Of a stretch of DNA of 64,000 nt, positions 23,308 through 62,660 are shown in pieces (position 1 is the stretch's first letter; every line of letters starts with the position of its first letter). The translations under genes and the position numbers were made by a program. The stretch spans positions 124,001 to 188,000 of the IMG/VR virus record IMGVR_UViG_3300035181_000357. One strand, written 5' to 3'. The notes under the pieces were generated by a model. That model did no database searches and was not told the DNA's origin. It saw only the letters and a list, made by a program, of their open reading frames with translations.

Positions 23308-23334
23308 CTTTTCTGTCTATTAATAGAGGATTGT

Positions 23335-24006
23335 ATGAAGATTGGATATGTGGCTAGTAGAAAAGGAGAGATATCCCTGTTCTTAGACATGGGTGGTTCT
23401 CCTTATATCCAGGTGTCTCTCGATCCATCTATTCCTCAGATCCCCGGAGTAAGTATCAGGGTCCAGGTTAAGGATGACTCAGAGTTTCTAGTAATATCAA
23501 AAATGGCAGTAACCACTCTTTTAGAGGAAGTAACTGCATTTCTAGTTGGTCAGAACGTATCTATGGATGTGGTAAAAGAATTTAGTGCTAATGCATTAAA
23601 GGCCCTAGATAAGAATTTTGAGGAAAAAGATGCAAAACCTATACCTGAGAGCGCAGTTCTTCTTAATAAAATATTGGAATCTGAATCCTCTAAATTATTT
23701 GAGATAGAATTTGATCTTCCTGAAGCTTTCTTTGACGATGTTTACAAGAATGTAGTCACAGCGTCAGGGACTGAATATCGTAGAACGGATCGAGCCAAGC
23801 CCTATAAGCGAGAGCATGGTATAAAGATGGAAGATATCCCAGATAGTATAGATCCTAAGAAGGTTATAAAGAAGTATCGAAATAATATTTATAAGCACAC
23901 ACCATCTAAGAACTATATCCTAACTTATGATATAAATGGTCGTCCAACAGGGATGGTTGAAGCACCCAAATCTCCTATGAGATTTAAATCTAAACTACTG
24001 AAATAA
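23335..24006 (+). CDS. Hypothetical protein
   Basis: 223-aa ORF with AGAGG RBS; ends in MRFKSKLLK motif. Confidence 0.6.
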   Translation: MKIGYVASRKGEISLFLDMGGSPYIQVSLDPSIPQIPGVSIRVQVKDDSEFLVISKMAVTTLLEEVTAFLVGQNVSMDVVKEFSANALKALDKNFEEKDAKPIPESAVLLNKILESESSKLFEIEFDLPEAFFDDVYKNVVTASGTEYRRTDRAKPYKREHGIKMEDIPDSIDPKKVIKKYRNNIYKHTPSKNYILTYDINGRPTGMVEAPKSPMRFKSKLLK

Positions 24007-24682: not shown

Positions 24683-25108
24683 ATGAAGAAGCAAGATGAA
24701 GTTTTTCGTCAAGTTCAAACAGAAATTTCTAGTATGTTAAAGAGAGATGGTGTCCTCGATAAAACACCCTACGTTGTACTAGAAATCATAGATAGACTTA
24801 AGACGGTAACAGATTGGGAAGATCGAGATCGAACCAAGACTATAGCCAAGTCTATCAGAGAAATAGTAGAGATATGTATTAAAAATCCCAAGGCGAAGCC
24901 ACCATCCAAACCTGTGGCACTTAAATCTATATACGAGGATGCTGAATCGTTCGGAGATGAATTCGATGTTCATCCAGAATTAGAAGTAGATTGGGATAGA
25001 TCCAAGTCTGTGGAGAAATACTCTAATACAGAACTCGGGTCTGCGAAGAAGAATCTCATCAGATCAGCTCGAAGAGAAGAGAAGAAGAAATTAAGAAAAG
25101 CTGGTTAA
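24683..25108 (+). CDS. Hypothetical protein
   Basis: 141-aa ORF with AGGAG RBS. Confidence 0.6.
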   Translation: MKKQDEVFRQVQTEISSMLKRDGVLDKTPYVVLEIIDRLKTVTDWEDRDRTKTIAKSIREIVEICIKNPKAKPPSKPVALKSIYEDAESFGDEFDVHPELEVDWDRSKSVEKYSNTELGSAKKNLIRSARREEKKKLRKAG

Positions 25109-25956
25109 CCTTTGTGAATGTGCATCTGCCTAAGATGTTCTTTAGCCTCAGCTTCTGTTCTATGGCTGGAGATTATCTTATCAGTCTCATGTGATTTAAC
25201 ACACCATTCAGCTAGTTCACCTTTCGAATTTTTATGGCCAGGGCATTTCGTAACAAAAGATAATTTTATCTTAGCCTGTAGTAACTTAGATGCAAACTTC
25301 TTTCTTAGTTCTTTCATGTGCTTCTTACGAGCTAGTAGCTTTCTGAGTATCTCTTGTTTATTTGATGGTCCAATCTCAAGGACAATCTTCCTTATCGAAG
25401 CATCTGGAAGAGATAGGACTTTATCGATTGAGTCCCTGATCTCGTGTTTACTCATCCCGTTGAATACACTATGTGCTGTCTCATTGATATCAGCGTCTCG
25501 TAACGATTCTATCTCTATTACCTGGTCTCCAAATGCTGGGCCCTTTTTCTGACCCTGTGCTCTATAGTCAAGAGAACCACCTGGGTCGATTCTGTGGACT
25601 ACTCCGAGTTCCTTGTCTAGAAGCATGTTGTCATAATCGAGACCAACAACATCCCAATTAGCTAACCATGCATCTACAGCGAAGGCGTCCTTGCCAGAAG
25701 CGAGTTCAGATACATCGTAACTAGGTGCTAGGTTTGAATTCCATTTTGATGCAATACCAAGTTGCCCACTTATCTGAACTAACTTAGCTTCTGGGACATG
25801 GACACCAGCAAGCTCGTATAGCTTGTAGGCCAATAACTCATTCCTCATCCTATCTTCATTAGATAGAAATTTTATGTACCACTTCATACCTTCTTCATCC
25901 TGGTATAATCCACCAGGATTAGAACCCATCTGGTCCTTTAACTTCTTCCAGGCCAT
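25105..25956 (-). CDS. Atypical kinase, PI3/PI4-kinase or HipA-like fold
   Basis: GSNPGG loop, WYIK lysine, NELLAYKLY helix, DAWLANWD..G...DN catalytic loop, RIDPGG. Confidence 0.65.
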   Translation of the reverse strand: MAWKKLKDQMGSNPGGLYQDEEGMKWYIKFLSNEDRMRNELLAYKLYELAGVHVPEAKLVQISGQLGIASKWNSNLAPSYDVSELASGKDAFAVDAWLANWDVVGLDYDNMLLDKELGVVHRIDPGGSLDYRAQGQKKGPAFGDQVIEIESLRDADINETAHSVFNGMSKHEIRDSIDKVLSLPDASIRKIVLEIGPSNKQEILRKLLARKKHMKELRKKFASKLLQAKIKLSFVTKCPGHKNSKGELAEWCVKSHETDKIISSHRTEAEAKEHLRQMHIHKG

Positions 25957-26089
25957 ATCTACCTCTATAATAGGAGATAGAAATCTATTTTAAAGATATA
26001 TCCTGAGTGTGATAATGTAGAAGTCCTGGTTGAGCTCCGATTAGAATATAGGAGTACTAATCTATACCCTAAGTCCCTGAAAATATGGC

Positions 26090-31614: not shown

Positions 31615-32169
31615 ATGACTTGTATTGTCGGGATGGTAAAAGATAACAAGGTATGGATCGGTGGTGATTCCGCAGGGTCAGACAACTCATCTATCTGTAT
31701 TCGTAGAGACCCAAAAGTGTTTAAAAATGGCCATTTCTTAATCGGTTTCTGTGGAAGTTTCAGATTTGGTCAGTTACTACATTATAAGTTCACCCCACCA
31801 TTAAACTCTGAAGAGAAAGATGCTTTCAGCTTCATGGTGACCGATTTTGCTGATGCAGTTAGAGAATTAGCGAAAGAACATGGTATCTTGAAGATAGAAG
31901 ATAATGTAGAAGAGTTAGAAGATATCCAACTCTTAATAGGATATCAAGGAAGATTATTCACTCTCGAAGAAGATTTTCAGATTGGTGAAGTAGAGAATGA
32001 ATACTATGCGGTTGGTGAAGGTATGGATCTGGCATTGGGATCTATGTATACTACCAGTAGACAGAAACGTGGATATACACCAAGGAAGAGGCTCGAGATG
32101 GCATTAGAAGCTTCAGCACTCTTCTGTAAGAGCGTGGCTCCCCCGTTCGTTATATTAGGATTACAATAA
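31615..32169 (+). CDS. Ntn-hydrolase, HslV/proteasome-beta-like peptidase
   Basis: MTCIVG N-terminal Thr nucleophile, GGDS, AVGEG..LALGS. Confidence 0.75.
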   Translation: MTCIVGMVKDNKVWIGGDSAGSDNSSICIRRDPKVFKNGHFLIGFCGSFRFGQLLHYKFTPPLNSEEKDAFSFMVTDFADAVRELAKEHGILKIEDNVEELEDIQLLIGYQGRLFTLEEDFQIGEVENEYYAVGEGMDLALGSMYTTSRQKRGYTPRKRLEMALEASALFCKSVAPPFVILGLQ

Positions 32170-34330: not shown

Positions 34331-34342
34331 TTGGAGGTAACT

Positions 34343-34990
34343 GTGCTCAGAGATTCTCTCAAACCCAGAATTGAAGAGGCTTCGGCTTCTAAATCCTATG
34401 GTCCAGAGATTCTCCACGGTCTCATCGAGAAAGAATCCACGTACCGACCCGATGCTGTGTCAGAGACTGGTGTTCGAGGTCTATGTCAATTGACCGAGGC
34501 TACAGCGAAGGAAGTCATCCAAAAACATGGTCTGAAAATGCCGATATCAGCTATCTTAAAACCTGAAAATCAGGTGTTGTTAGCAAGTTTGCGTTTAGAA
34601 GAGATGATTGGACGAGTGGAAGCCAGGTATCCCAAGCTGTCTGAAGAAAAACAACTGGAACTCGCTCTTCATGCCTACAACGCTGGTTACTCAGCCGTTA
34701 CAACGGCAGTATCTAAAGGTGGGATAAAGGGTTTCAAGCAGTTCTTGCCTAAGACTGCTGATAAGAAATATGCGATGAAAGTAATGTTCCACAGTAAATC
34801 CTGGAAAGTAGGAAAGGTCCAGACCCAGGTTCCCACACCAAGGATTACGATCGCTCCTGAATTTTACCACTTCCTCCCATTCTTGACATTTTTATTTTTA
34901 GTATTCTACTTTGCTAAGAAGTATCAGACTACTGGTATCTTCGAGGTCGAGCCATGGGATTTGAAACAGGATGTGTTGAAGACGCTATAA
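34343..34990 (+). CDS. Soluble lytic transglycosylase (SLT domain) with C-terminal membrane helix
   Basis: LIEKES, GVRGLCQL, AYNAG motifs; GTG start at 34343 after GGAGG (track start 34331). Confidence 0.85.
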   Translation: MLRDSLKPRIEEASASKSYGPEILHGLIEKESTYRPDAVSETGVRGLCQLTEATAKEVIQKHGLKMPISAILKPENQVLLASLRLEEMIGRVEARYPKLSEEKQLELALHAYNAGYSAVTTAVSKGGIKGFKQFLPKTADKKYAMKVMFHSKSWKVGKVQTQVPTPRITIAPEFYHFLPFLTFLFLVFYFAKKYQTTGIFEVEPWDLKQDVLKTL

Positions 34991-35256
34991 TCCTCATCCA
35001 TCAGATGAAGAGTGAGTTTCTCGGTGATCTGGAAGGGCATAATAAGTTAGCTAACGAGGTGATCGCTACTCTCCGAGTAGAAGGCCCACGTATAGAGAAA
35101 AATAGAGATGTATTAGGGATCATAAACTTCCAATTGGTGAGATTGGCTGTATGTATACCAGATGAATTTGATGATCATCCACTGGTAGAGAAATTCAAGG
35201 ACAAGGTGCAGGATCTCTGCAATTGTTATGATGGTGGATTGGATTCCGGGGACTAA
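34954..35256 (+). CDS. Hypothetical protein
   Basis: 100-aa ORF overlapping the end of the SLT gene. Confidence 0.5.
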   Translation: MGFETGCVEDAIILIHQMKSEFLGDLEGHNKLANEVIATLRVEGPRIEKNRDVLGIINFQLVRLAVCIPDEFDDHPLVEKFKDKVQDLCNCYDGGLDSGD

Positions 35257-35285
35257 AGAACTTTAGATCTCTTATGTAGAGAGTT

Positions 35286-36110
35286 TTGATGTTCAAATCC
35301 CAGTTACTTAAGACAGCTGCTCCACCAGATCTTAATCCTAAGATCAGATATGTCTATCTCGGTGCGGAAGCTGCCAAGCTGATTCGTGATCTGGAGAAAT
35401 GTAAGGGTAAATTCCTAATACTTGAAGGTGTAGCAGGAGTATCCTCCAGCGCAGGTATCTTCCACAGCTTTGGAAATATAGATGTCACAATTCCATATAG
35501 AGAATTCCTATCGTTAAATAACGTGGAAAGAGTAGACTATAAGGATCATGACGACATAGTAAAGAATACAGCTATGTTCTACTCCAGGATTGTTGATGGT
35601 GAGTTGGTCGAAGCAAATTATTATGTCATCAGGGGAATTATATCATCTGTCCTATATGATAAGATGGATTCAGGAAAATTAAAATATCTAGCTAGTAAAG
35701 ATTTCGATGAATGGCATGAAGTATCTAATGGATATCGCTGGACAGACCACCATCAATCTACTCTACAAAAGATGCTCCGGAAGACTTCATTCGACAGTGT
35801 TAATGAATTGGTATGGTTTATTTTGATGTTCCTAGAACGAACTCTAAAATGTTGGGATCAATTTACAGACAAAGATATCAACAAGATTGAAGAAGTGTTG
35901 AGATCTGGGGTAAAGGATAAGATAAGACAGAGTACTGGATATACAGGTGAAAAAGAACTGATCATTATGGATAAGAGATTGGTGTTACCTCATGGGACTT
36001 CAATACACCATCTATATAATAAGATCATAGCACAGGATGGTAGTGGATATCTATTCGAGAAACTAAGAAAATTTGGAATAACCATGCCTGACGGTGACGA
36101 CGATGTTTAG
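35286..36110 (+). CDS. Hypothetical protein, paralog A of tandem pair
   Basis: Shares IRYVYLG, ILEGVAGVS, LNNVERVDY, TSFDSVNELVWF with next ORF. Confidence 0.7.
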   Translation: MMFKSQLLKTAAPPDLNPKIRYVYLGAEAAKLIRDLEKCKGKFLILEGVAGVSSSAGIFHSFGNIDVTIPYREFLSLNNVERVDYKDHDDIVKNTAMFYSRIVDGELVEANYYVIRGIISSVLYDKMDSGKLKYLASKDFDEWHEVSNGYRWTDHHQSTLQKMLRKTSFDSVNELVWFILMFLERTLKCWDQFTDKDINKIEEVLRSGVKDKIRQSTGYTGEKELIIMDKRLVLPHGTSIHHLYNKIIAQDGSGYLFEKLRKFGITMPDGDDDV

Positions 36111-36984
36111 ATCTAGTCTCTTAAAATCAGCTGCTCCTCCTAAGATGGATAAGAGGATAAAGTACGTATACCTAGGTCCAGATCATAGAAAATTTCTTAG
36201 AGATCTTCTAGAATCCAAGGGACGAAATCTCATCCTAAAGGGTGTAGTAGGGGTTTCCACAAACAAGAATATACTACATGAGTTCGGTGACTTTGGTATG
36301 ACAATGCCATATCAAGATTTTCTGAGACTCAACAATGTTGAGAGAATCGACTACAATAATCACAATGAGATAGTAAAGAACACGAACATGTTCTATAACA
36401 GAATGATCCATGGGTTCTTACAAGAGGCTAGTCCGAGTATCCTTAGCAATATCATGTATAGTATCCTAGGTGGTCTAGCTAGAGCATCTGAGATGAAAGA
36501 CCTATATAAGGTATTAAATCCACGAAAACTTATCCCGCCATTTGCTGAATCCGGGTATTACATTCAGACCTTCTATAAAGATTTCTGTGAACTGGTTGAT
36601 ACCACATCATTCGATAGTATAAATGAACTCGTATGGTTCACCATGATGTTCTTGGAGAAGACGTGGTCAGCATGGAAGAAACTAACTCAGAAAGATATAA
36701 ATCTTATAGAAAAGACCATAAGATACATAGTCAAGAAAAAGATAAAGGATGACGCTGATGCGTTCGCTCACGAGGAAGAAATTTTGATCATGGATCAGAA
36801 GCTCGTAGTACCTCGCGGTACGAAGATAGAAAATGGCCTCGGATACATCTTGGGTGGTAGGAAAGATCTAGATATTTTGATGGCAAAATTGAAGCAATTT
36901 GATCTCGTCTTAGAAGAAGGTGAGATGCTTGAACTCGAGATCCGAGTAGAGAATAATAAGAAGACATTGTCTTTAGCCAAATAG
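36094..36984 (+). CDS. Hypothetical protein, paralog B of tandem pair
   Basis: IKYVYLG, ILKGVVGVS, LNNVERIDY, TSFDSINELVWF; likely start ATG 36103. Confidence 0.7.
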   Translation: MTTMFRSSLLKSAAPPKMDKRIKYVYLGPDHRKFLRDLLESKGRNLILKGVVGVSTNKNILHEFGDFGMTMPYQDFLRLNNVERIDYNNHNEIVKNTNMFYNRMIHGFLQEASPSILSNIMYSILGGLARASEMKDLYKVLNPRKLIPPFAESGYYIQTFYKDFCELVDTTSFDSINELVWFTMMFLEKTWSAWKKLTQKDINLIEKTIRYIVKKKIKDDADAFAHEEEILIMDQKLVVPRGTKIENGLGYILGGRKDLDILMAKLKQFDLVLEEGEMLELEIRVENNKKTLSLAK

Positions 36985-37012
36985 CCTCTGGTAATTACTA
37001 TCTGAGGTATAT

Positions 37013-37408
37013 GTGTGTAAATGGTCTAGAGGGTTTGACGTAGCATCTGCTGCAGCTAAGCATTCTAATGCTCCATTCACTCGTGTACGTATGGGTGCCG
37101 CACTGTTTAGTGGTTCAAGATTGGTGAGTCTTGGATTCAATACCTATTACAAATCACATCCAGATCACCATGCACATGGTAGGGTAGGCCGTTGTTTCGA
37201 GAACATCCATGCAGAACAAGGTGCTCTGATCAAGAGAAAGCACTATGAGGATACTAACCTTATTATGTATGTGTGGCGGGAACTTGAATCTGGTCAGGCG
37301 GCTAGTTCCAAGCCTTGCCCGATGTGTATGACCTTAATGACTAAGGCTGGTGTGAAAAAGGTTAGATTTATGGAAATTGACGGTTCCTGGGCTGAAATCA
37401 AACTTTAG
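37013..37408 (+). CDS. Cytidine/dCMP deaminase-family Zn enzyme
   Basis: HAE and PCPMC zinc motifs; GTG start. Confidence 0.85.
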   Translation: MCKWSRGFDVASAAAKHSNAPFTRVRMGAALFSGSRLVSLGFNTYYKSHPDHHAHGRVGRCFENIHAEQGALIKRKHYEDTNLIMYVWRELESGQAASSKPCPMCMTLMTKAGVKKVRFMEIDGSWAEIKL

Positions 37409-37441
37409 TTACCCAGAACAGTAATTCTTACGTAATCTATT
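37409..37441 (+). promoter_or_regulatory. Conserved phage promoter motif, copy 2
   Basis: TTACCC-N18-TAATCT-ATT. Confidence 0.6.
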
Positions 37442-37449
37442 CCAGAGCG

Positions 37450-37713
37450 ATGATGCTCATCTCCACGAGGAATCCCATGCAGAAGCTGGTCAATCCTATC
37501 CTGATCGCCAACAAGCCTGAGACCTTCACTCCCTACCAGGTTCGCCAGGTCCAGAAGTTGTCTGAGAAGTTCCAGATGGTTTCGATCCCTGAAGCCGACC
37601 TGAACCGTACCCAGAAGGCTCCCCTGTCGGTCCTGTTCTACGACTGCAATGGGAAGCTGAACCTGTACCGCATCGGCCAGCATAACGTCCTCGGGAAGCG
37701 GGTTACTCGGTAA
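37450..37713 (+). CDS. Hypothetical protein
   Basis: 87 aa, C-ending codon bias like neighbours, downstream of promoter motif. Confidence 0.6.
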   Translation: MMLISTRNPMQKLVNPILIANKPETFTPYQVRQVQKLSEKFQMVSIPEADLNRTQKAPLSVLFYDCNGKLNLYRIGQHNVLGKRVTR

Positions 37714-37738
37714 ATCTACTGTTCAGAACCCCAATTCA

Positions 37739-37771
37739 TTGTCCAAAACGGTAAGAATCGCGTAATCTAGT
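37739..37771 (+). promoter_or_regulatory. Conserved phage promoter motif, copy 3
   Basis: TTGTCC-N18-TAATCT-AGT. Confidence 0.75.
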
Positions 37772-37787
37772 GTTCTGGAGGTGTTAA

Positions 37788-38474
37788 ATGGCTAAGACTG
37801 CCGTGATCGACGTGTTCGGTGCTGCCCCTGTGGTGCCCAGCAAGAGGAAGGCTGAAAAGGGTGAAAAGCCTGGTATCGAGTCCGGTGTGGCTCTCGCCAA
37901 GGTCGCCGCCATCGACTTCATCATGAAGTCTCTGAAGGGTGTTCGCGAGACCTACGAAGGCATGCTCAAAGACGAGATGCTGGACAAGTTCGTGGAAACT
38001 GGCCTGGCTGGTCAGAAGCGTCCAGACAACTACCGTGGTGTGAACGGTAAGGGTGAAGCTAGCTGCGAGATGCGCAAGCGTTCCACGGCATCACCTCTGT
38101 CGGATGATGAAGTGTCTGAGCTTGCGAAGCTCGGCATCGAAATCAAGCTGGAAACCGTGCAGGAAGAGATGTTCGTGTTCAACGCTGAAGTGCTGAAGAA
38201 CCCTGAACTTCGGGCCAAGATCTCGGCAGCTTTCGCCAAGATCGACTTCGGTGACATCCAGCCCATCTCCAAGATCGAAGCCCAGCAGAAGTACGTGGCC
38301 TCTGAGGAAGCGATCGAGGAAGTGTTCAAGAAGTCCAAGACCCAGGCGATCGGCTCCAAGTTGCTGTCGATGCTCACGACCCTGGCGGTCAAGAGCAAGT
38401 GGAATGGTAATAAGTCTGATGCCTACGCTCTCCTCGCGGAAGAGGACAGCATCACCTCGGTCACTCTGTCCTAA
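37788..38474 (+). CDS. Hypothetical protein
   Basis: 228 aa, GGAGG RBS, strong codon bias. Confidence 0.7.
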   Translation: MAKTAVIDVFGAAPVVPSKRKAEKGEKPGIESGVALAKVAAIDFIMKSLKGVRETYEGMLKDEMLDKFVETGLAGQKRPDNYRGVNGKGEASCEMRKRSTASPLSDDEVSELAKLGIEIKLETVQEEMFVFNAEVLKNPELRAKISAAFAKIDFGDIQPISKIEAQQKYVASEEAIEEVFKKSKTQAIGSKLLSMLTTLAVKSKWNGNKSDAYALLAEEDSITSVTLS

Positions 38475-39058
38475 TGTTCTACCCTCCTCGTCCAGAGAAG
38501 GCTGTCGATCCATCCGAGTTGGGGCGATTTGAATCACTCGGATGGATCGGTCAGTTCAAGAAGAATGGTACGTACACTGTACCGGATAGAGAGAAGGTCT
38601 ACACGAGGCATCTCGAACCTCACAAGTTGTGGAACCCAAACGACAGCAAGGCGATGACAGAGATCCGAAAGATTCCTGGGATCACTCTCTGTTCCGAACT
38701 CCTTCATAAGAAGGTTAGTGGTGGAAGCCAGGATACTCTGTACATACATGACATCCTCGTCATCAACAACGAAGATCTCGTTGGAGTATCCTACGAAGAC
38801 AGGTACAAGATGCTGTTGAATTTGTTCGTATGGAAAGATGAAGGAAACCCTGACTATTTTGTCGTAAACAAGAATCTATGGATCAGCAAGTGGATCTACA
38901 AAGGTTTCCTGAAAACGTTCAATGCCATGACCAATCCTGAAGATGAAGGTTTGGTTCTGAAGAATCCCAAAGCCAAACTGGCTTTCTGTGGTAAACCAGG
39001 AAGTAACAGTAGTTGGCAGATTAAGTGTCGCCGACCCCATAAGAATTACAGCTTCTGA
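38474..39058 (+). CDS. Minimal ATP-dependent ligase/nucleotidyltransferase (adenylation domain only)
   Basis: Motif I QFKKNG, III SELL, IIIa YIHDIL, IV EGLVLK, V WQIKCR; no OB domain. Confidence 0.7.
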   Translation: MFYPPRPEKAVDPSELGRFESLGWIGQFKKNGTYTVPDREKVYTRHLEPHKLWNPNDSKAMTEIRKIPGITLCSELLHKKVSGGSQDTLYIHDILVINNEDLVGVSYEDRYKMLLNLFVWKDEGNPDYFVVNKNLWISKWIYKGFLKTFNAMTNPEDEGLVLKNPKAKLAFCGKPGSNSSWQIKCRRPHKNYSF

Positions 39059-39073
39059 ATTGACCATTAAAAG

Positions 39074-39106
39074 TTACCTATTAGAGAAATGACCAAGTAA
39101 TCTAGT
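39074..39106 (+). promoter_or_regulatory. Conserved phage promoter motif, copy 4
   Basis: TTACCT-N18-TAATCT-AGT. Confidence 0.7.
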
Positions 39107-39123
39107 GGGTCGAGGAGGAAATA

Positions 39124-41271
39124 ATGAAGCTGAGTGGCGTGCAGGAAGCGGGTTCGGTTCAGGTGATGGCACCTGGTGTCCAGAGAACCTTCCAGATCCA
39201 CAATAACATCAAGTCCTTCAGGATCCTGTCTGATGGCCTTTACAGTGATAAAATCACTGCGGTTATCCGGGAACTGTCCTGCAATGCCTGGGATTCTCAT
39301 GTGGCAGCTGGTAAGAAGACCGTGCCATTCGAGGTCCATTTCCCCACTGGCCTGGAACCCTGGTTCAGCGTCCGTGACTTCGGGATCGGTCTTTGTGAAG
39401 AGGACATCTACGACCTCTACACCACGTACTTCAGTTCCAGCAAGGACCAGTCGAACGAGTTCATCGGTGCACTCGGTCTCGGTTCCAAGTCTCCCTTCTC
39501 GTACTGTGAGACTTTCACGGTAACTTCGAACTTCAATGGTTCGAAGCAGATCTTCAGTGCTTTCATCAGCGAAGAAGGTCTCCCGACCATCATCAAGATG
39601 CACGAAGAGACTACGACTGAAGGCAATGGCCTGGAAGTCAAGTTCCCGGTGAAGCGTGATGACATCAGCAACTTCCACTACAAGGGTGCCAATGTCTTCG
39701 AGTTCTTCGAAGTCGCTCCCAAGCATAATCTCAGTGGACAGCGTATTCCCAAGAACGACTACATCCTTAAGGGTATCGTGGATGGGTGCTGGTGGGGGAT
39801 TCGTGCTGGTGCTGGCAACGTTCGTGCCGTCATGGGATCCATCTCCTATCCTCTCGATCTGAGTGGGCATGGTCTCAGCTCTGAAGAGCAGACTGTCGCC
39901 GCCTGTGGTATCGATATCCAGTTCAATCTTGGGGATCTCGAGATCGCTGCCAGCCGTGAAAAGCTGTCCTTCAACAAGATCACGATCGCCAACGTGACCA
40001 AGCGTTATCGTGCCATTTTCGAGCAGATGAACAAAGAGATCCACGACAAGCTCGATGCCGCTACCACTGTGTGGGATGCTCGCAAGGCTCTCTTCTTGAT
40101 GACGAATGACCAGTCGGTTGGTCGCATCGTTCGCAACCTGATCCAGACCAACTCGATCAAGGGCAAATACACCAACTTCGAGTTCGATGGTAGTACCTCT
40201 GGATCTTTCAAGGCCACGGAGTATCCGGAACTGAATGTCATCGGTGTCTCTCCTGCTTCTGGGATCTGGGCCAAGAAGAATCTGTATTCCAGTGACTACA
40301 AGGTTAAGATCGAAGCCTCTAGCAGTCAGCGATTCATCCTGAACGATATGTTCCGTGGTCACAACCAGATCCTCGCTGAACTGGTCAAGGATGGTAGTCG
40401 CTTCATCATGCTGACTCCTCGCAAACTCAAGGATCTCTCGGATGACGAGAAGGTCGAGGCTGCAAAGCTGGCTGCTGAACAGGTCGAGAAGTTCATGGCG
40501 AACTTCGAAGGTGCCAAGCTCGAGAAGATCAGCGACTACCATGATCTGCTTGAAAAGCGTGTCCCAGGTGAAAAGAAGACCCGGATTCGCAAGAACTACT
40601 TCCACTACGTCGGTAATAAGACCTGGGGTGGTTCGTTTGAGCACATCCCCGACGCCGAGTTCGATACGGCTACCGATGGCGATGTCTTGTTCTTCCCAAT
40701 TCACAACATGAAGCCAGCCCAGGACCGTATGGAGCAGGAAAGTGCCGAGGATTTCAGCACCTTCATCTATCGGCTTCGTCAGGCCGGGATCATAGGCAAG
40801 GATACCAAGCTGGTCGCCTACAAGGTTCGGGAAGAGTTCGAGATCTCTGAGCCTGAGAAGGATCTGCTCACTTTCGTGGACGAGACTATCGCCAAGAAGC
40901 TGACCGATCCCAAGATCGCTAGCTACTACAACGATGACAATTCCTTCACTGTCCCCGATCTCTTCAACTCCTATGAGATCTGGAACACTCGCAAGGGCAC
41001 AAAGGGTCAGGCTTTCTTCGCTACCAAGTTCGGTGCCTTGATGGCCGAATACCGAGAGTACAAGGATGGCCGGGACAAGAATTCTGAATTCATTCGTATG
41101 TGCTACACCCTTGGTATCAAGAAGCAGAAGAGTATGTTCACCAAGGATCTGGCCGATAAGTGCAAGAAAGTTGCCACCAAGTATCCCATGCTCAGTCTTC
41201 TCCAAACCTACTACATCGCCAACAACCTTGAAATTCTAACCGATTACCTGAATCTCGTTGATTCTCAGTAA
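39124..41271 (+). CDS. rIIA: RIIA-like protein (N-terminal GHKL ATPase)
   Basis: LYSDKITAVIRELSCNAWDSH, VRDFGIGL, GALGLGSKSPF; followed by rIIB-like gene. Confidence 0.8.
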   Translation: MKLSGVQEAGSVQVMAPGVQRTFQIHNNIKSFRILSDGLYSDKITAVIRELSCNAWDSHVAAGKKTVPFEVHFPTGLEPWFSVRDFGIGLCEEDIYDLYTTYFSSSKDQSNEFIGALGLGSKSPFSYCETFTVTSNFNGSKQIFSAFISEEGLPTIIKMHEETTTEGNGLEVKFPVKRDDISNFHYKGANVFEFFEVAPKHNLSGQRIPKNDYILKGIVDGCWWGIRAGAGNVRAVMGSISYPLDLSGHGLSSEEQTVAACGIDIQFNLGDLEIAASREKLSFNKITIANVTKRYRAIFEQMNKEIHDKLDAATTVWDARKALFLMTNDQSVGRIVRNLIQTNSIKGKYTNFEFDGSTSGSFKATEYPELNVIGVSPASGIWAKKNLYSSDYKVKIEASSSQRFILNDMFRGHNQILAELVKDGSRFIMLTPRKLKDLSDDEKVEAAKLAAEQVEKFMANFEGAKLEKISDYHDLLEKRVPGEKKTRIRKNYFHYVGNKTWGGSFEHIPDAEFDTATDGDVLFFPIHNMKPAQDRMEQESAEDFSTFIYRLRQAGIIGKDTKLVAYKVREEFEISEPEKDLLTFVDETIAKKLTDPKIASYYNDDNSFTVPDLFNSYEIWNTRKGTKGQAFFATKFGALMAEYREYKDGRDKNSEFIRMCYTLGIKKQKSMFTKDLADKCKKVATKYPMLSLLQTYYIANNLEILTDYLNLVDSQ

Positions 41272-41292
41272 TCCAACCCAGAAGGAGATACC

Positions 41293-42408
41293 ATGTTTCC
41301 AATGATCATCACCAAGTCGTATATCAATCTCGTGATTGGTGGACGCTCTCGAACGGTGGAAGCTTCCAACAAGTTCTTCCCTCAGCTTCTTGATGCAGTC
41401 AAGAACCAGGCTTGGGAGGCTGTTGATACGCTCTCCGATCTGGCCCAGGCCATCAACAAGGCTGGTGCTGGCAAGGTCGTGGTCGAAGACGGTGTTGTCT
41501 TCTACGATGGTATGCCTGTCCACAACATCGTCGCCACCAGAATCCTGGACATGCTGGCCGAGGGTTGGACTGTGGATCCTATGATCAAGTTCTTGGAGAA
41601 CCTGCTCCAGAACCCTGTGGCATCTGCCATCGATGAGCTCTATCTCTTCATGGAAGCCAATTCCCTGCCTCTGACTCCGGATGGACATTTCCTGGCCTAC
41701 AAGGTGGTCACTTCCAACTTCAAGGACAAGCAGACCAAGACCTTTGACAATTCGGTCGGTGCTGTCCTGGATATGGATCGTGCCAAGTGCGATCTGGATC
41801 GGAACAACCATTGCAGTAGTGGTTTCCACTTCTGTGGCTTCAGCTATCTCTGTCACTTCGGTTCTGCCGATGACCAGATCATGATCGTCAAAGTGAATCC
41901 CAAGGATGTCACCAGCATTCCTAGCGACTACCAGAATGCCAAGGGTCGTGCCTGTCACTATGTGATCCAGGAGCACTACGGCAAGTTCAGTGACTTCTTC
42001 GAAGTCGATCGTCTGGCCACTGCGGCTGTCACCGAGACCAGTGAGATCGAGTTCCTTGCTGTCGAAGGCAATCCCATTCGTAGCCTTCGTGAGCTTCTCG
42101 GATTCAGCCAGCGCGAAGTGGCCGAGTATGCTGGCTACAGCAAGTCAACGCTGTGGAATGCCGAGCAGATCTCCAACACTCCCAAGGTCGAGACGATGGA
42201 TCGCTGGGCCCAGGCCATGACCGATCTTCGCAACGAGCGAGACGAGACGAGTGTTCGTAAGTACACCTTCAAGATCGATGAAGCCATTCGCATCATGATC
42301 GAGACCCTCCCAAGCGAGGACGAGGCTGAATTCGAAACCTCCTTGAGTGACTTCGAGCCTGAATACTGCGAGGACTGTGATCAGGATCTCGACGACTGCG
42401 ACTGTTAA
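41293..42408 (+). CDS. rIIB: RIIB-like protein with C-terminal XRE-type HTH
   Basis: LTPDGHFLAYK, CSSGFHFC, VKVNPKDV, KGRAC; then LRELLGFSQREVAEYAGYSKSTLWNAE. Confidence 0.8.
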   Translation: MFPMIITKSYINLVIGGRSRTVEASNKFFPQLLDAVKNQAWEAVDTLSDLAQAINKAGAGKVVVEDGVVFYDGMPVHNIVATRILDMLAEGWTVDPMIKFLENLLQNPVASAIDELYLFMEANSLPLTPDGHFLAYKVVTSNFKDKQTKTFDNSVGAVLDMDRAKCDLDRNNHCSSGFHFCGFSYLCHFGSADDQIMIVKVNPKDVTSIPSDYQNAKGRACHYVIQEHYGKFSDFFEVDRLATAAVTETSEIEFLAVEGNPIRSLRELLGFSQREVAEYAGYSKSTLWNAEQISNTPKVETMDRWAQAMTDLRNERDETSVRKYTFKIDEAIRIMIETLPSEDEAEFETSLSDFEPEYCEDCDQDLDDCDC

Positions 42409-42432
42409 GTCCTACAATCCCAATGACTTCCG

Positions 42433-42456
42433 ATGGGGCCTTAAGTGGCCCCATTT
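42433..42456 (+). terminator. Intrinsic terminator
   Basis: ATGGGGCC-TTAAGT-GGCCCCAT-TT. Confidence 0.7.
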
Positions 42457-42470
42457 CATTGGTTAAGAAA

Positions 42471-42503
42471 TTATCCTGAATGGTAAGAACCCAGTAATAT
42501 AGT
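42471..42503 (+). promoter_or_regulatory. Conserved phage promoter motif, copy 5
   Basis: TTATCC-N18-TAATAT-AGT directly after terminator. Confidence 0.7.
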
Positions 42504-42521
42504 TTCTTGAGGAGAATCGCC

Positions 42522-42923
42522 ATGATCACCACCATCAGCCGTTCTGACATGTCTGTCCTTCGTTCCGAGGTCAATGCGGCCATCGCCGCTGTCGCCACCA
42601 AACATGGTCTGGTGATGGCCCTGGGATCCGGGAAGTTCAATGAAAAGAACGCTTCCTTCAAGCTCGAGATCTCCACCAAGGATCAGAATACTGGGATGGT
42701 GAAGAGCAGGGAAGCCACCAGCTTCGAAGTCAATGCCCATTTCTACGGCTTCAAGGCCGAGGATCTCGGTACCACCTTCAAATCGAATGGTCGGACTTTC
42801 AAGATCACGGGTCTCAACACTCGTCGTCCCAAGTTCCCTCTCCTGGCTGTCTGTGTGGAAGATGGGCGAACCTACAAGTTCCCTGACACGACCGTCCTGG
42901 CCTACCTTGGCCGAAAGAAGTAA
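42522..42923 (+). CDS. Hypothetical protein
   Basis: GAGGAG RBS before ATG 42522 (track start 42507). Confidence 0.65.
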   Translation: MITTISRSDMSVLRSEVNAAIAAVATKHGLVMALGSGKFNEKNASFKLEISTKDQNTGMVKSREATSFEVNAHFYGFKAEDLGTTFKSNGRTFKITGLNTRRPKFPLLAVCVEDGRTYKFPDTTVLAYLGRKK

Positions 42924-42925
42924 CG

Positions 42926-43282
42926 ATGCTCAAGGTCCTGTTCATCGACGATCAGATCGAGCGTGTGGAAGCTGCTAAAGCGTATCTGACCAGAGAGGGG
43001 GACGAATTCACCTGGGCTACTGAAGTCCCCAACAACCTCGAAGACTACGACATCATCTCTTTCGATAACGATCTCGGTGTTGCTCCTGAAAAGGATGTCG
43101 TGATCCAGTTGGGTAAGCGTCTGTTCTGTGGTAACTGTTCTCTCGCGAACAAGATCATCACGGTCCATTCTATGAACCCTGTGGCCGCTGCCCGTATTGG
43201 AAGCTTGTGTGAAGGTTTGGGTGCCACCAATGTGGCCATCGTTCCCTTCTCTCGTATGTTGTTAGGTCCCAACCAGTTGTAG
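42926..43282 (+). CDS. Standalone receiver-like domain, cyclic-phosphate-processing receiver (cREC) type
   Basis: VLFIDD, IISFDNDLG, ITVHSMNP..A..I motif set. Confidence 0.65.
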   Translation: MLKVLFIDDQIERVEAAKAYLTREGDEFTWATEVPNNLEDYDIISFDNDLGVAPEKDVVIQLGKRLFCGNCSLANKIITVHSMNPVAAARIGSLCEGLGATNVAIVPFSRMLLGPNQL

Positions 43283-43287
43283 GAGTT

Positions 43288-44412: not shown

Positions 44413-44494
44413 GACTTCGAGTAATAATTATGTAGAACCAAACGGTTCTCTTCCCACAGAGAGTGGGTCGTATTAAAAATACACGGAGAGTGTC

Positions 44495-45508: not shown

Positions 45509-45514
45509 GCTACC

Positions 45515-45826: not shown

Positions 45827-45848
45827 ACTTTCCTAAAGGAGAAATACC

Positions 45849-52310: not shown

Positions 52311-52336
52311 TAAGAGCCTGGGTTTCCAGGCTCTTA
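52311..52336 (+). terminator. Hairpin/terminator
   Basis: TAAGAGCCTGG-GTTT-CCAGGCTCTTA. Confidence 0.6.
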
Positions 52337-52354
52337 TTATAGAGGTTCATATCT

Positions 52355-52612
52355 ATGATTCAAGAATGGGTTCTACAAACCGTCCTATGTGATGATCCAG
52401 GAGCTATGGCAGTAGATTGGGACACTTTTAATATCGGTGTGGTAGAAGATGGGGTATTCAGGTCGATATACAGTTGCTGGTGTCTCCCTGATGCAGAACA
52501 TCTGTTATCAGCATTGCGTTGGTATTCCACATTCTCTAAAGATGGTATCATAAAAGAACCTGTACAACCTGTTCCTCAAACAAAGAAACGAAAGAAAGTA
52601 TCTGATGTATAA
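52355..52612 (+). CDS. Hypothetical protein
   Basis: 85 aa, AGAGG RBS. Confidence 0.55.
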   Translation: MIQEWVLQTVLCDDPGAMAVDWDTFNIGVVEDGVFRSIYSCWCLPDAEHLLSALRWYSTFSKDGIIKEPVQPVPQTKKRKKVSDV

Positions 52613-55052
52613 TCCTTTAACTGGTTTCGAAAATGATCCAAAGGTATCGAATTGTATTCGTGCTTTCGCTGAACATCCAGAGATTGCTGAAGAGATTAAA
52701 GCATACTATATCCTAGAAAAGGTAGACGATGATGGATATACAGAAGACCGTCATCTCATAGCAGAAACCACCTGGAAGACTGGTGATTTCATTCATTTCA
52801 CACATAAGATTGTAGGTAGAGACTTTCAAGATCCATATGAAGGTCACGAAGGTCCTACTGATGGTAGAGATTTTGAAGGTCAGTTTGCTATAATCCCAAA
52901 GAAGAGAGCAAAGAAGATCATAGATTTTCAGAAAGCTTTAGGAAAAGTTACTAAATATAGAAATCTTGAAGATATCCCAAAGAGAGAAGACATGAAGAAG
53001 AAATCTAGACTAGTGACTAAAAAATCTACCGGACCTACTTTGTATTCAAAGTTAGAAGATATCAAAAATGAAATCGATAAATATCTGAAGTGGGATCATG
53101 TCAATGACGACACAAATGAAGATATTCCAGAAGACAATATCACTGCCTCCTATAGACTGTATACAAAAGAAGGAATCATCATATTCTCTGTATCAGTCTT
53201 TGATAAGACGAAGAATGGAAATGAGATCTTCACCGGATTCTCTAAGCCAGGATCCGAACAATTTGAGAACACTGGTCTATATAATTTCAACAACGTGAAC
53301 AAGATGCTGAAGAATGTAGCTAATGTCGCAGCTACAAAATATCATATCGAGGAAGCACCTGTCGAAGATCTTCCAGAGATGGGTAACGATGATGACAAAG
53401 AATTCCTAAAGTCGATCGGGATTCGTTCTAGTCAGAAGAAGGCATATGCTCCTAATGTAGCTCAGGCAGCTAACACTTTTTTAGAGAAATACATTGGAAA
53501 GATTCTGTCTCCGAGTGAGTTGAAGGAAGCTATATCTTCCGTATCTAGTTCCTGGAAAGATGTAGTAAACTACATGAAAGATTTCAGTTTGATAGTACCT
53601 GATGGGAATAATTTTAAGATCTTAAATAGAGATATGGTGGATGACATGAAGATTCGTACTGGTTCAAAACATGCAGCAACTAGCCCAACTCCTCCTGGAG
53701 CTGCGTTGGTATCAGCGATCAAAAATCGTAAACAGAACCCTGAAGATTTCGAGACATTCAAGGCCTTGTTTAATGCCTTTAAAGAAGATTTCAGTGCAAC
53801 CAGCGGTCAGGAAGGATGCTACTACATCATGGAGCGTCTAGGATTCTTAGAGAAGGATATAAATCCTCTCTTAGGTTTGGGTAGTACTGGAACTCCTGAA
53901 GAGAAGTTCGTCAGAAATTATTGGGATGAAGTGAACCGTCAGTATGATGAAAAGAAGAATCAAGATCGTACTACCAAGTATGGCCCAGACTTAGTGGCTC
54001 TCTGTAAGGAAGTTTATGCCTACGCAAACCAGCCTGAGAATTACGAGAATGGCTGGGACACGGTTGCAGAAGCTTGGGACCTAGAAGAACTGGCTGAAGA
54101 GATTAAGGACTGCAAGACCTTGGATGAAGCTCTCTCGATTATGAAGCAATACAAGACAGCATCCTCAAAGACTGGTAAGCAGAAACGCTCGAGATTGATG
54201 AAGCGCAGAGCAGGGATCGAGTTAGATTGGGATCCAGCTACCAGAAGAGACATAGGTAGAGAAGAAGCCAGAGCTAGTGACAAGATCCTAAGAGATCTCG
54301 GCACATATGTAGAGAAATTAAAATCTAGCCTGATACAAAATGGTGTATCTCTTGGCCAAGCTCTATCAAACATGAATCTGAAAGAGTTATTCACCTCTAC
54401 TGACTATACAAAGAGATCGCTCGGTAACAAGTTGAGATCACAGACAGAACAGTTCCTAAAGAACTATCCAGAGAAGGAACAGAACTTCTTTAAAGAGAAT
54501 TATGGACAGAACATTTCAGATATTCTAAGAAAAGTGGTAAAGACTAGTAATATAGATCCACAGATGTATGATATCAAACCTGATATCTCTCAAGATGTAT
54601 TGGAGAAGAAGTCCATGGATGCAGATCGTTACTATGGTGGACCTGACGAGAGTGGTCCAGATCCCGACGAAGTTACACAAGCACTAGTCTCTAAGTTCCC
54701 AATGGCTTTAGGGTTCATTTCTCAGAAGATAGATCCTCAGAGTCCTGACTGGGATATCATGAATAAAGTCAGTGACGAGATGTATCCAAAGGAATTTATC
54801 GACAGAGTAGAGGTTGATCTTTGGGATGGTGATGACGTATACTATTTCGATTATGATGTAGACGCTTCTGAGATTGAGCAGATCAATGCCAATTTCTTGA
54901 AGAGACAACATGAGTTGGGTTCTACGAATCCTGAACCTCTCTGCAAGCTCGAACTCGTCCCATATCACGAGCTACCCAATAAGGTCATTGAGAAGCTAGA
55001 AGAAGACTTCGAAGACTATGTGGACCTGGATCCTGAACCATGGGTTGATTAA
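52605..55052 (+). CDS. Large acidic multi-segment hypothetical protein (candidate internal virion protein)
   Basis: 815 aa; acidic blocks separated by short basic linkers. Confidence 0.65.
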   Translation: MYNPLTGFENDPKVSNCIRAFAEHPEIAEEIKAYYILEKVDDDGYTEDRHLIAETTWKTGDFIHFTHKIVGRDFQDPYEGHEGPTDGRDFEGQFAIIPKKRAKKIIDFQKALGKVTKYRNLEDIPKREDMKKKSRLVTKKSTGPTLYSKLEDIKNEIDKYLKWDHVNDDTNEDIPEDNITASYRLYTKEGIIIFSVSVFDKTKNGNEIFTGFSKPGSEQFENTGLYNFNNVNKMLKNVANVAATKYHIEEAPVEDLPEMGNDDDKEFLKSIGIRSSQKKAYAPNVAQAANTFLEKYIGKILSPSELKEAISSVSSSWKDVVNYMKDFSLIVPDGNNFKILNRDMVDDMKIRTGSKHAATSPTPPGAALVSAIKNRKQNPEDFETFKALFNAFKEDFSATSGQEGCYYIMERLGFLEKDINPLLGLGSTGTPEEKFVRNYWDEVNRQYDEKKNQDRTTKYGPDLVALCKEVYAYANQPENYENGWDTVAEAWDLEELAEEIKDCKTLDEALSIMKQYKTASSKTGKQKRSRLMKRRAGIELDWDPATRRDIGREEARASDKILRDLGTYVEKLKSSLIQNGVSLGQALSNMNLKELFTSTDYTKRSLGNKLRSQTEQFLKNYPEKEQNFFKENYGQNISDILRKVVKTSNIDPQMYDIKPDISQDVLEKKSMDADRYYGGPDESGPDPDEVTQALVSKFPMALGFISQKIDPQSPDWDIMNKVSDEMYPKEFIDRVEVDLWDGDDVYYFDYDVDASEIEQINANFLKRQHELGSTNPEPLCKLELVPYHELPNKVIEKLEEDFEDYVDLDPEPWVD

Positions 55053-58596: not shown

Positions 58597-58712
58597 GATC
58601 CCATAGCTCAGTTGGACAGAGCAACAGCCTTATCGCACTCCTGACCAGGTGGGTTTGGAACTGCATGGCTCTAAGCTGTAGGTCGCTGGTTCGAGCCCAG
58701 CTGGGATCACCA
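58597..58712 (+). tRNA. tRNA-Arg(UCU) interrupted by 39-nt insertion in the anticodon loop
   Basis: GATCCCA/TGGGATC acceptor, A20, ACAGC/GCTGT stem, T arm, ACCA; removing 58631-58669 restores loop CTTCTAA. Confidence 0.8.
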
Positions 58713-62268: not shown

Positions 62269-62303
62269 ATATCAAACTTTATAATTATATGTAGAGGACT
62301 ATC

Positions 62304-62660
62304 ATGTTCAAAGCTAAACTACTAAAGACTGCATCAAGTCCACAATTGACTCTGGCTCAACAAGTCTATGCTCAACATAAGGCAGAGATAGATCCTAAGA
62401 TTTTCAAGGCTGCTGACTATGTAGTTGATAATGCTATCGATCTAGATTCTGAAACTGCAGATAATCATCTATTTGGTGATGCTATATTTGAGCCATGGTT
62501 TGAAGCCAGCCCAGAATATCTCAGTATGACAGAAGAATCTGGGAACGAAGATGACGAGACCGATTATATTGGTGGTGTCTGGGAACAAGTTCTGTCTACA
62601 AATCCAAAGTATAAAGATGTCGTAGCTAAATTTGCTGACATCAGAATCAATGGATATTAA
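62304..62660 (+). CDS. Acidic hypothetical protein inside the tRNA island
   Basis: 118 aa, AGAGG RBS, N-terminal MFKAKLLKTASS. Confidence 0.7.
   Translation: MFKAKLLKTASSPQLTLAQQVYAQHKAEIDPKIFKAADYVVDNAIDLDSETADNHLFGDAIFEPWFEASPEYLSMTEESGNEDDETDYIGGVWEQVLSTNPKYKDVVAKFADIRINGY

What the first reader, a model, noticed from the sequence alone, without database searches (positions are those of the whole stretch)
35286..36140. Shared F(K/R)(S/A)xLLK(T/S)A peptide in unrelated proteins: candidate packaging or processing signal
Seen: N-termini MFKSQLLKTAA (35286), MFRSSLLKSAA (36103) and MFKAKLLKTAS (62304); C-terminal MRFKSKLLK (ORF 23335); internal FASKLLQ (kinase 25105); weaker KRSRLMKRRA and KSRLVTKKS linkers in the 815-aa protein (52605). 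Two are paralogues but the others are unrelated. Established: T4 uses a short capsid-targeting sequence removed by the prohead protease. Inference: an analogous tag marking proteins for encapsidation and injection.
Basis: partly seen in the sequence, partly recalled or inferred. Interest (0 to 1): 0.6.

Follow-up and report, generated by a model that had tools for sequence, protein, structure and literature searches.

The report
Shared terminal address peptide in jumbo phage
A short basic peptide (core F-x-S-K-L-L-K) sits at the very start, the very end or in linkers of at least eight otherwise unrelated proteins of this soil jumbo phage and its relatives. It most likely marks effector-type proteins for loading into the phage head and for trimming by the head protease, much as phage T4 does with a different peptide.

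Summary
The window is part of a 210-kb fragment of a roughly 300-kb jumbo myophage related to Tunturiibacter phage Tunturi_5. F.SKLL occurs 5 times in its proteome against 0.1 expected. A looser pattern gives 8 hits, 6 of them at a protein terminus (P = 2e-6). Codons differ at synonymous sites, so the constraint is on the peptide.

I found two further C-terminal instances outside the window. The tag is invariant in orthologues of two unrelated families, and it recurs on other proteins in Tunturi_5 and in a complete 313-kb relative. The carriers are modules of "polyvalent" virion-delivered effector proteins.

N-terminal tags end in (K/R)-x-A. The same motif is conserved in the capsid protein N-arm (ILKTAAG) and at fixed places in the head protease and the scaffold. 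Five tag-bearing genes share a TAT-rich upstream motif with the portal, tape-measure and other virion genes.

Best reading (0.5): a capsid-targeting and maturation-cleavage tag, functionally like the T4 capsid-targeting sequence but unrelated in sequence and usable at either terminus. There is no proteomic proof. One complex prediction gave no answer.

The parts
35289..36110 (+). 273-aa protein (P0001), first of two tandem paralogues. The N-terminal tag MFKSQLLKTAAPP is at 35289-35327. The body is a domain also found in ART-PolyVal polyvalent proteins, and the model has a possible ADP-ribosyltransferase-like fold.
36103..36984 (+). 293-aa paralogue (P0006). The N-terminal tag MFRSSLLKSAAPP is at 36103-36141. 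The start overlaps the stop of the upstream gene. One gene caller used a later start (279 aa), but the tag is conserved in orthologues.
62304..62660 (+). 118-aa orphan protein (P0007) filling the gap between tRNA-Pro and tRNA-Asp. The N-terminal tag MFKAKLLKTASSP is at 62304-62342. No homologue was found.
23335..24006 (+). 223-aa protein in the baseplate gene block. The C-terminal tag FKSKLLK is at 23983-24003, preceded by the linker EAPKSP. In relatives this domain is part of large polyvalent proteins.
25105..25956 (-). HipA-like kinase (weak Pfam/PHROG matches). The internal tag FASKLLQ is at 25276-25296, exactly where a 63-aa C-terminal module begins. That module is found elsewhere fused behind a domain like the 223-aa protein's.
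52605..55052 (+). 815-aa protein with two basic tag-like linkers (53001-53027 KSRLVTKKS; 54186-54212 RSRLMKRRA, preceded by KTASS at 54153-54167). The part after the second linker is a stand-alone protein starting MKSRLLNKKTG in a 221-kb relative.
35259..35288 (+). Upstream block AACTTTA-N6-TATGTAGAG-N7-ATG, found only here and at 62275-62303. Its TAT-rich element plus Shine-Dalgarno part belongs to a motif class also found before the portal, tape-measure and virion genes.
62275..62303 (+). Second copy of the same upstream block, in front of the 118-aa gene.
23316..23334 (+). TCTATTAATAGAGG motif 5 nt before the start of the 223-aa gene (late-promoter-like, by analogy only).
25957..25985 (-). 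TATTATAGAGG motif 5 nt before the kinase start.
52332..52354 (+). TCTTATTATAGAGG motif before the 85-aa ORF that overlaps the start of the 815-aa gene.

Best explanation
The peptide is a portable address tag used by a clade of soil jumbo myophages: this genome, two uncultured relatives, Tunturiibacter phage Tunturi_5 and a complete 313-kb genome from the IMG/VR viral collection.

Anatomy (shown). The core is [F/Y]-x-[S/A]-K-L-L-(K). It occurs in three settings:
- at the extreme N-terminus, followed within 1-4 residues by (K/R)-x-A and a small residue or proline;
- at the extreme C-terminus, behind a proline-containing linker;
- in linkers between modules.
The carriers are otherwise unrelated. 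They are of the kind found in polyvalent proteins, which phages are thought to pack into the head and inject.

Mechanism (inferred).
- The tag docks these proteins onto the head-assembly machinery, so that they are enclosed in the prohead.
- In the N-terminal and linker versions the adjacent K-x-A is cut by the head maturation protease.
- The same protease would trim the capsid protein N-arm, itself and the scaffold at matching motifs.
- The cargo is then ejected with the DNA.
In function this equals the T4 capsid-targeting sequence, with a different sequence and a freer position.
For: Shown:
- Non-random, terminal and peptide-level.
- The N-terminal tag is conserved in all full-length members of the 273-aa family found, which share 31-45% identity overall (MSFKAKLLTAAPP, MRFRSKLLLAAPP, YKSKLLTAVP, MKSDLLTAAP).
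- The C-terminal [FY]KSKLL[KR]-stop is invariant in orthologues of the 223-aa protein at 44-70% identity.
- Two more C-terminal tags lie outside the window: FISKLLKKESK-stop (72 aa, genome 102598-102816, minus strand) and FTSKLLKKD-stop (266 aa, genome 196218-197018).
- A 28%-identical homologue of the 266-aa protein from outside the clade stops just where the tag would begin.
- Tags in Tunturi_5: gp205, ADP-ribosyltransferase plus GNAT (MSRSKLLTRRASS); gp198 (YVSKLLKKAG); gp272, InPase plus GP88 (MKSGLL); gp224, a GNAT/ParB-like polyvalent protein.
- In the complete 313-kb relative, 3 of 4 pattern hits are N-terminal (P = 0.0016).
- Carrier domains occur in polyvalent proteins. Distant relatives of the 273-aa family all carry ART-PolyVal. 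The 223-aa domain heads a 2182-aa protein with PolyA_pol, ART-PolyVal and DUF7178 domains.
- [LIM][LIM]K[TS][AP][AGS] has five hits in the proteome: the three tags, the capsid protein N-arm and the head protease. The capsid motif is conserved in 29 relatives; K-x-A recurs at two protease sites and at scaffold domain borders.
- 5 of the 8 genes with the strict upstream motif carry tags; two of the other three are the portal and the tape measure (hypergeometric P = 6e-7).

Background: T4 internal proteins share only a capsid-targeting sequence (PMC3012670). Phage polyvalent proteins are predicted to be packaged (PMC5512222).
Against: - No virion proteome, N-terminal sequencing or expression data exist for any member; the Tunturi paper has none.
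- The scaffold plus 273-aa protein complex prediction gave no answer.
- This genome's own capsid protein reads LLKSPGG, with Pro where the proposed P1 Ala should be.
- K[TS]A on its own is not enriched: 47 seen, 42 expected.
- C-terminal tags have no cleavage motif.
- Most tag-bearing genes lie among nucleotide-metabolism, tRNA or orphan genes rather than head genes.
- The specificity of this protease family is unknown. The proteases of phiKZ-like giant phages cleave C-terminal to an A-x-E motif (PMC10052503, and my own knowledge).
- The "late promoter" reading rests on analogy with the T4 motif TATAAATA, and the motif overlaps the ribosome-binding site.
- The tag was not found by the full 13-residue profile in five more distant relatives.
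Confidence: 0.5

Rival explanations
1. The tag is a short linear motif that binds some other hub. Examples are a degron or adaptor signal for an AAA+ unfoldase-protease (the phage encodes an HslV-family peptidase and a tmRNA), a chaperone, or a replisome clamp. It would have no role in packaging.
For: - Either-terminus placement is typical of degrons and clamp-binding motifs (my own knowledge).
- An HslV-like peptidase lies at 31615-32169 and a tmRNA at 60444-60784.
- Many tag genes sit outside structural modules.
Against: - It does not explain the likeness to the capsid protein N-arm and to the protease and scaffold sites.
- It does not explain the polyvalent-protein nature of the carriers.
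- It does not explain the upstream motif shared with the portal and tape-measure genes.
- No replisome protein of the genome carries the tag.
Confidence: 0.2
2. The motif is only a processing site and linker relic. Polyvalent polyproteins are cut at these linkers, and when the genes split at the linkers the halves of the site stayed at the new termini. The tag would have no targeting role.
For: - Internal copies sit at module borders (kinase, 815-aa protein).
- The same modules are fused or separate in different relatives.
Against: - C-terminal half-sites would decay if useless, yet FKSKLLK-stop is invariant at 44-70% identity.
- The tag was added to a protein whose homologue outside the clade lacks it.
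- An orphan 118-aa protein carries a complete one.
Confidence: 0.12
3. The tag is a membrane-targeting amphipathic helix (like the MinD or FtsA tails) that takes the proteins to the cell membrane.
For: - It is short, basic, has F/L/L on one helical face, sits at either terminus and is followed or preceded by proline.
- Some copies have a helical hydrophobic moment in the 85th-99th percentile.
- A short helix is predicted at residues 6-9 of the model.
Against: - Other copies are at the 18th-59th percentile.
- Membrane helices tolerate wide sequence drift, whereas here S, K, L, L are nearly fixed across unrelated proteins.
- It gives no reason for the match to the capsid N-arm.
Confidence: 0.1
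4. The match is chance plus paralogy, or a DNA/RNA-level element that happens to be translated.
For: Two carriers are paralogues. The 273-aa and 118-aa genes also share about 45 nt of upstream DNA.
Against: - Statistics.
- Synonymous codon differences at nearly every position.
- Conservation in orthologues of unrelated families.
Confidence: 0.02

Closest known systems
Phage T4 capsid-targeting sequence of internal proteins IPI-III and Alt
   Same: A peptide of about 10 residues, shared by otherwise unrelated proteins, at the N-terminus and ending in the head protease's site. The cargo includes anti-defence proteins and an ADP-ribosyltransferase that are injected (PMC3012670, PMC5512222).
   Different: There is no sequence likeness. 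The proposed cut is after K-x-A, not after L/I-x-E. The tag is also used at C-termini and in linkers. It resembles the capsid protein's own N-arm. The protease matches PHROG phrog_18299. A search of this genome for the T4 gp21 and gp23 Pfam models found nothing, but that search was uninformative.
N-terminal propeptides of head and ejection proteins in phiKZ/SPN3US giant phages
   Same: A jumbo-phage head holding many cargo proteins, some with short (20-24 aa) N-terminal propeptides removed by the prohead protease. A targeting role has been proposed for them (PMC10052503).
   Different: Those propeptides share a cleavage motif ending in Glu, not a common address peptide. Here a defined heptapeptide is shared.
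Polyvalent proteins of phages (Iyer, Burroughs, Anand, de Souza, Aravind 2017)
   Same: The same domain repertoire (ART-PolyVal neighbours, InPase, GNAT, ParB-like) and the same predicted delivery through the capsid.
   Different: In this subclade the modules are separate small proteins, each with its own tag, instead of one giant chain.
Encapsulin cargo-loading peptides and microcompartment encapsulation peptides
   Same: A short terminal peptide on a flexible linker, at either end, that loads unrelated cargo into a protein shell. Encapsulin shells have the HK97 fold (my own knowledge).
   Different: The consensus differs and there is no protease step. Binding to the shell protein was not tested here.
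Herpesvirus assemblin sites (V/L/I-x-A, cut before S) and HK97 capsid maturation cleavage
   Same: A capsid maturation protease cutting after a small residue, with a defined P3 residue, in capsid and scaffold proteins (my own knowledge).
   Different: It is only an analogy for the proposed K-x-A site. The fold and specificity of this protease were not determined (one search found no solved relative).

Membership tests
T4-type capsid-targeting sequence | A short N-terminal peptide shared by otherwise unrelated proteins of one phage | tested here: met
   Three N-terminal copies in this genome, one of them on a protein unrelated to the other two. More in relatives.
T4-type capsid-targeting sequence | The peptide ends in the cleavage motif of the prohead protease, which also occurs in the capsid and scaffold proteins | tested here: inconclusive
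   (K/R)-x-A follows every N-terminal tag. It is conserved in the capsid N-arm, at two protease sites and at scaffold borders. Cleavage is not shown, and this genome's own capsid protein has Pro at the proposed P1.
T4-type capsid-targeting sequence | Tagged proteins are present, processed, in virions and are injected | not testable with these tools
   No proteome exists for this clade.
T4-type capsid-targeting sequence | Homology to the T4 system (gp21-type protease, gp23-type capsid protein, L/I-x-E sites) | tested here: inconclusive
   PF03420 and PF07068 were not found, but the controls did not ring either. The capsid protein is a generic HK97-fold protein (NF042927). No L/I-x-E follows the tags.
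Polyvalent-protein effector modules | The domain occurs in multi-domain phage proteins together with ART-PolyVal or other polyvalent-type domains | tested here: met
   - 273-aa family: relatives at 47-59 bits, all with PF18760.
- 223-aa domain: fused to PolyA_pol, ART-PolyVal and DUF7178, or to GNAT and ParB-like domains.
ADP-ribosyltransferase fold (for the 273-aa family) | ART-like beta core with catalytic residues | tested here: inconclusive
   - Model pLDDT 76.
- The best structural matches are ART-fold proteins: Tpt1 at Z 7.7, DarT at Z 5.3. Z below 8 is not decisive.
- A conserved E-x-E is present.
- Foldseek found nothing.
- The profile comparison with ART-PolyVal was negative.
Membrane-targeting amphipathic helix | High helical hydrophobic moment with loose sequence conservation | tested here: not met
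   The moment ranges from the 18th to the 99th percentile. The sequence is tightly conserved.

The most novel reading that the evidence does not exclude
A whole clade of soil jumbo phages uses one modular "address and cut" peptide that copies the capsid protein's own N-arm.
- Placed at an N-terminus, a C-terminus or between modules, it programmes which effector enzymes are loaded into the head and where polyproteins are cut.
- Effector arsenals can then be shuffled between giant polyvalent chains and sets of small tagged proteins.
- The tag would also work as a ready cargo-loading handle for engineering these phages.
Probability: 0.3. Interest if true: 0.75.

Novelty: new variant of a known kind. 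Interest (0 to 1): 0.62.

Why it matters
How giant phages choose the dozens of proteins they pack and inject is largely unknown outside T4. If this reading holds, it would matter in four ways:
- A defined, sequence-readable tag would allow the injected effector set of a whole phage clade to be predicted from genome sequence alone.
- It would explain how polyvalent proteins and stand-alone effectors interconvert.
- It would give a handle for loading foreign proteins into capsids.
- A cultured member (Tunturi_5, on an Acidobacteriota host) makes it directly testable.

Tried and rejected
- Word-index protein searches found only the genome's own copies for the 273-aa and 118-aa proteins.
- Scans of the IMG/VR viral collection with the two-paralogue profile and the eight-sequence profile found no relative.
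- The 273-aa family is absent from the phage collection by tblastn. My own HMMs did not find it in Tunturi_5 or in the 221-kb and 313-kb relatives.
- Pfam, PHROGs and NCBIfam gave nothing for the tag carriers.
- Foldseek against PDB and BFVD gave no match for the 273-aa model.
- The model of the 223-aa protein was too poor to search (pLDDT 57).
- The complex prediction of scaffold with the 273-aa protein gave no answer (score 0.00). I do not count it for or against binding.
- Logan-assembly contigs of the two closest relatives could not be searched whole, so no second genome of the subclade could be given a tag census.
- The 13-residue tag profile found nothing in ten more distant IMG/VR records; looser patterns did.
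- The profile comparison of the 273-aa family with ART-PolyVal was negative.
- Upstream regions of Tunturi_5 genes gave no clear promoter motif.
- I considered and rejected chance, a DNA-level repeat, and Sec/Tat or lipoprotein signals (there is no hydrophobic core).
- I considered that the 118-aa protein is a diverged third paralogue. Only a weak H-x-F-G-D coincidence appears in the MAFFT alignment, and hhalign aligns residues 1-17 only.

Full report
**What the window is**

The window is bases 124001-188000 of a single 210,611-bp linear record from the IMG/VR viral collection. CheckV estimates it as 69% complete.

It encodes rIIA/rIIB, a baseplate wedge protein, a helicase, NAMPT, 19-20 tRNAs and a tmRNA. 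Outside the window the genome holds a terminase, portal, sheath, an HK97-fold major capsid protein, a scaffold-like protein and a head maturation protease.

The nearest cultured relative is Tunturiibacter phage Tunturi_5, a 308.7-kb jumbo myovirus of an Acidobacteriota host from tundra soil. The identities are capsid protein 67%, protease 54% and sheath 43% (PMC11924767). That paper contains no virion proteomics.

- F[KR]xxLL[KQ] occurs four times in the six-frame translation of the whole genome. Each hit is at the first residues or the last residues of a real ORF.
- The N-terminal 15 residues of the 273-aa and 118-aa proteins score 46. The background mean is -12 and the best unrelated pair scores 23.
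- BLASTP and hhalign find no similarity beyond residues 15-17.
- The two genes at 35289 and 36103 are tandem paralogues (43% identity).

With the core taken as F-x-S-K-L-L, the proteome has five hits against 0.10 expected (P = 8e-8). The looser pattern [FYW].[SA][KRQS]LL gives eight hits, six within a few residues of a terminus (binomial P = 2e-6).

Two C-terminal copies lie outside the window:
- a 72-aa protein ending FISKLLKKESK (genome 102598-102816, minus strand);
- a 266-aa protein ending FTSKLLKKD (genome 196218-197018).

The two non-terminal hits are the kinase (FASKLLQ) and the 314-aa neighbour of the 266-aa gene (FGSKLLN).

Codons differ at synonymous positions in nearly every copy, so selection acts on the peptide, not on a DNA element.

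**Conservation**

An exhaustive profile search found relatives of the 273-aa family. Every full-length member found keeps the tag at its N-terminus, although overall identity is only 31-45%:
- MSFKAKLLTAAPP
- MRFRSKLLLAAPP
- MEHKYKSKLLTAVP
- MKQKLNSKLLNRYLTAAP
- MKSDLLTAAP

They lie in the same gene order in two uncultured relatives: phosphoesterase, lytic transglycosylase, a 100-aa gene, the two paralogues, then dCMP deaminase.

Orthologues of the 223-aa protein at 44-70% identity all end in [FY]KSKLL[KR].

A 28%-identical homologue of the 266-aa protein from an unrelated contig stops exactly where the tag would start. The tag therefore looks like an add-on.

**What the carriers are**

- *The 273-aa family.* Its core (residues about 41-256) matches, at 47-59 bits, a domain inside proteins of 628-965 aa that all carry ART-PolyVal.
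- *Its fold.* The AlphaFold model (pLDDT 76) has a disordered tag with a short helix at residues 6-9. Its best structural neighbours are ART-fold proteins: Tpt1 at Z 7.7 and DarT at Z 5.3. The family also keeps an E-x-E. This remains a lead only.
- *The 223-aa domain.* In Tunturi_5 it is the C-terminal part of gp224, which has two GNAT domains and a ParB-like domain. In a 221-kb relative it is the N-terminal part of a 686-aa protein. In a complete 313-kb relative it heads a 2182-aa protein with PolyA_pol, ART-PolyVal and DUF7178 domains.
- *The kinase.* Its tag starts a 63-aa module. In another relative that module follows a domain like the 223-aa protein's.
- *The 815-aa protein.* The stretch after RSRLMKRRA is, in the 221-kb relative, a separate protein beginning MKSRLLNKKTG.

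Phage polyvalent proteins are predicted to be packed in the capsid and injected (PMC5512222).

**Tags in relatives**

Tunturi_5:
- gp205, annotated ADP-ribosyltransferase and carrying a GNAT domain, starts MSRSKLLTRRASS;
- gp198 starts MATSPQYVSKLLKKAG;
- gp195 starts MRAKLL;
- gp272 (InPase plus GP88) starts MKSGLL;
- gp224 starts MTVRASLL and ends WGSRLIQARAS.

In the 313-kb genome, three of four pattern hits are N-terminal (P = 0.0016). Another relative has MRFTFKAKLLQATP on an ORF just downstream of the capsid gene.

**Link to head maturation**

The pattern [LIM][LIM]K[TS][AP][AGS] has only five hits in the proteome: the three N-terminal tags, residue 17 of the capsid protein and residue 41 of the head protease.

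- *Capsid protein.* In 29 relatives the N-arm reads QLGQ(I/L)LK(T/S)AAG. In Tunturi_5 it reads TLLKSAAG, the same string as in SLLKSAAPP.
- *Protease.* It keeps K-x-A at two places in its N-terminal 45 residues while the flanks drift.
- *Scaffold.* It keeps K[ST]A after its N-terminal domain and PK[TSN]A before its C-terminal tail.
- *Tags.* Every N-terminal tag is followed within four residues by (K/R)-x-A.

I infer that K-x-A is the maturation site. The caveats are:
- this genome's own capsid protein has LLKSPGG;
- K[TS]A as such is not enriched;
- the protease's specificity is unknown.

**Co-regulation hint**

The 273-aa and 118-aa genes share AACTTTA-N6-TATGTAGAG-N7-ATG, a block unique to them.

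Its TAT-rich part plus Shine-Dalgarno sequence belongs to a wider motif. In strict form that motif precedes eight genes: the portal, the tape measure, a 60-aa ORF and five tag-bearing genes or operons (hypergeometric P = 6e-7). In relaxed form it precedes 16 genes, mostly virion genes. By analogy with the T4 late promoter TATAAATA (my own knowledge) this suggests late expression, as expected for packaged proteins. It is not shown.

**Synthesis**

Shown: a conserved, portable, terminal or linker peptide on unrelated effector-type modules in one phage clade.

Inferred: it is an address for the prohead. The N-terminal form ends in the protease site, which makes it a functional analogue of the T4 capsid-targeting sequence (PMC3012670) and of the propeptides of phiKZ-like phages (PMC10052503).

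The rivals are a hub or degron motif, a pure processing relic, and a membrane helix. Each explains part of the data, but none explains the capsid and protease likeness, the carrier type and the shared upstream motif together.

The one complex prediction (scaffold with the 273-aa protein) gave no answer.

No step had to be referred. All sequences are from phages of soil bacteria.

Noticed in passing
window 60444-60784 (+): A full-length tmRNA gene inside the phage tRNA array (Rfam RF00023, 93.4 bits). ARAGORN predicts the tag peptide AEPQLALAA.
   Followed up: partly
window 58597-58709 (+): Rfam calls a 113-nt tRNA here that ARAGORN did not list. It may be an intron-bearing or long-arm tRNA.
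   Followed up: no
window 48914-50434 (+): A 506-aa Ro60/TROVE-like RNA-binding protein (phrog_850). Relatives carry vWA_Ro60 at the same place, close to the tRNA/tmRNA array. No Y-RNA-like partner was looked for.
   Followed up: no
window 31615-32169 (+): A phage-encoded HslV-family (proteasome-like) peptidase (phrog_1040), also present in Tunturi_5 (gp106).
   Followed up: partly
window 44006-44412: A perfect 38-nt direct repeat (44061-44098 and 44375-44412) plus an 82%-identical 33-nt repeat (44006 and 44339), about 314-333 bp apart, among small ORFs.
   Followed up: no
window 36000-48000: G+C rises from about 0.40 (1-36 kb) to 0.47-0.51 over the rIIA/rIIB block and stays above 0.44 to the end of the window. 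This may mark a mosaic join.
   Followed up: no
window 34331-35256 (+): A lytic transglycosylase with a C-terminal membrane segment, followed by a 100-aa protein. In one relative the two are fused into a single 302-aa protein. Both lie directly upstream of the tagged paralogues.
   Followed up: partly
window 44495-47261 (+): An NAD salvage pair: a cytidylyltransferase/NMNAT-like gene and nicotinamide phosphoribosyltransferase (phrog_448). The pair is conserved in Tunturi_5.
   Followed up: no
protein P0013 (from the exhaustive search, not in the window): A 2742-aa repeat protein matched profile positions 122-186 of the 273-aa family 26 times (E = 6e-29). It also carries DUF4327/DUF6482-like repeats. 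This is unexplained and may be a compositional artefact.
   Followed up: no
window 9531-17567 (+): A 2678-aa ORF in the tail-fibre block, 31% identical over its first 1170 residues to Tunturi_5 gp246.
   Followed up: no
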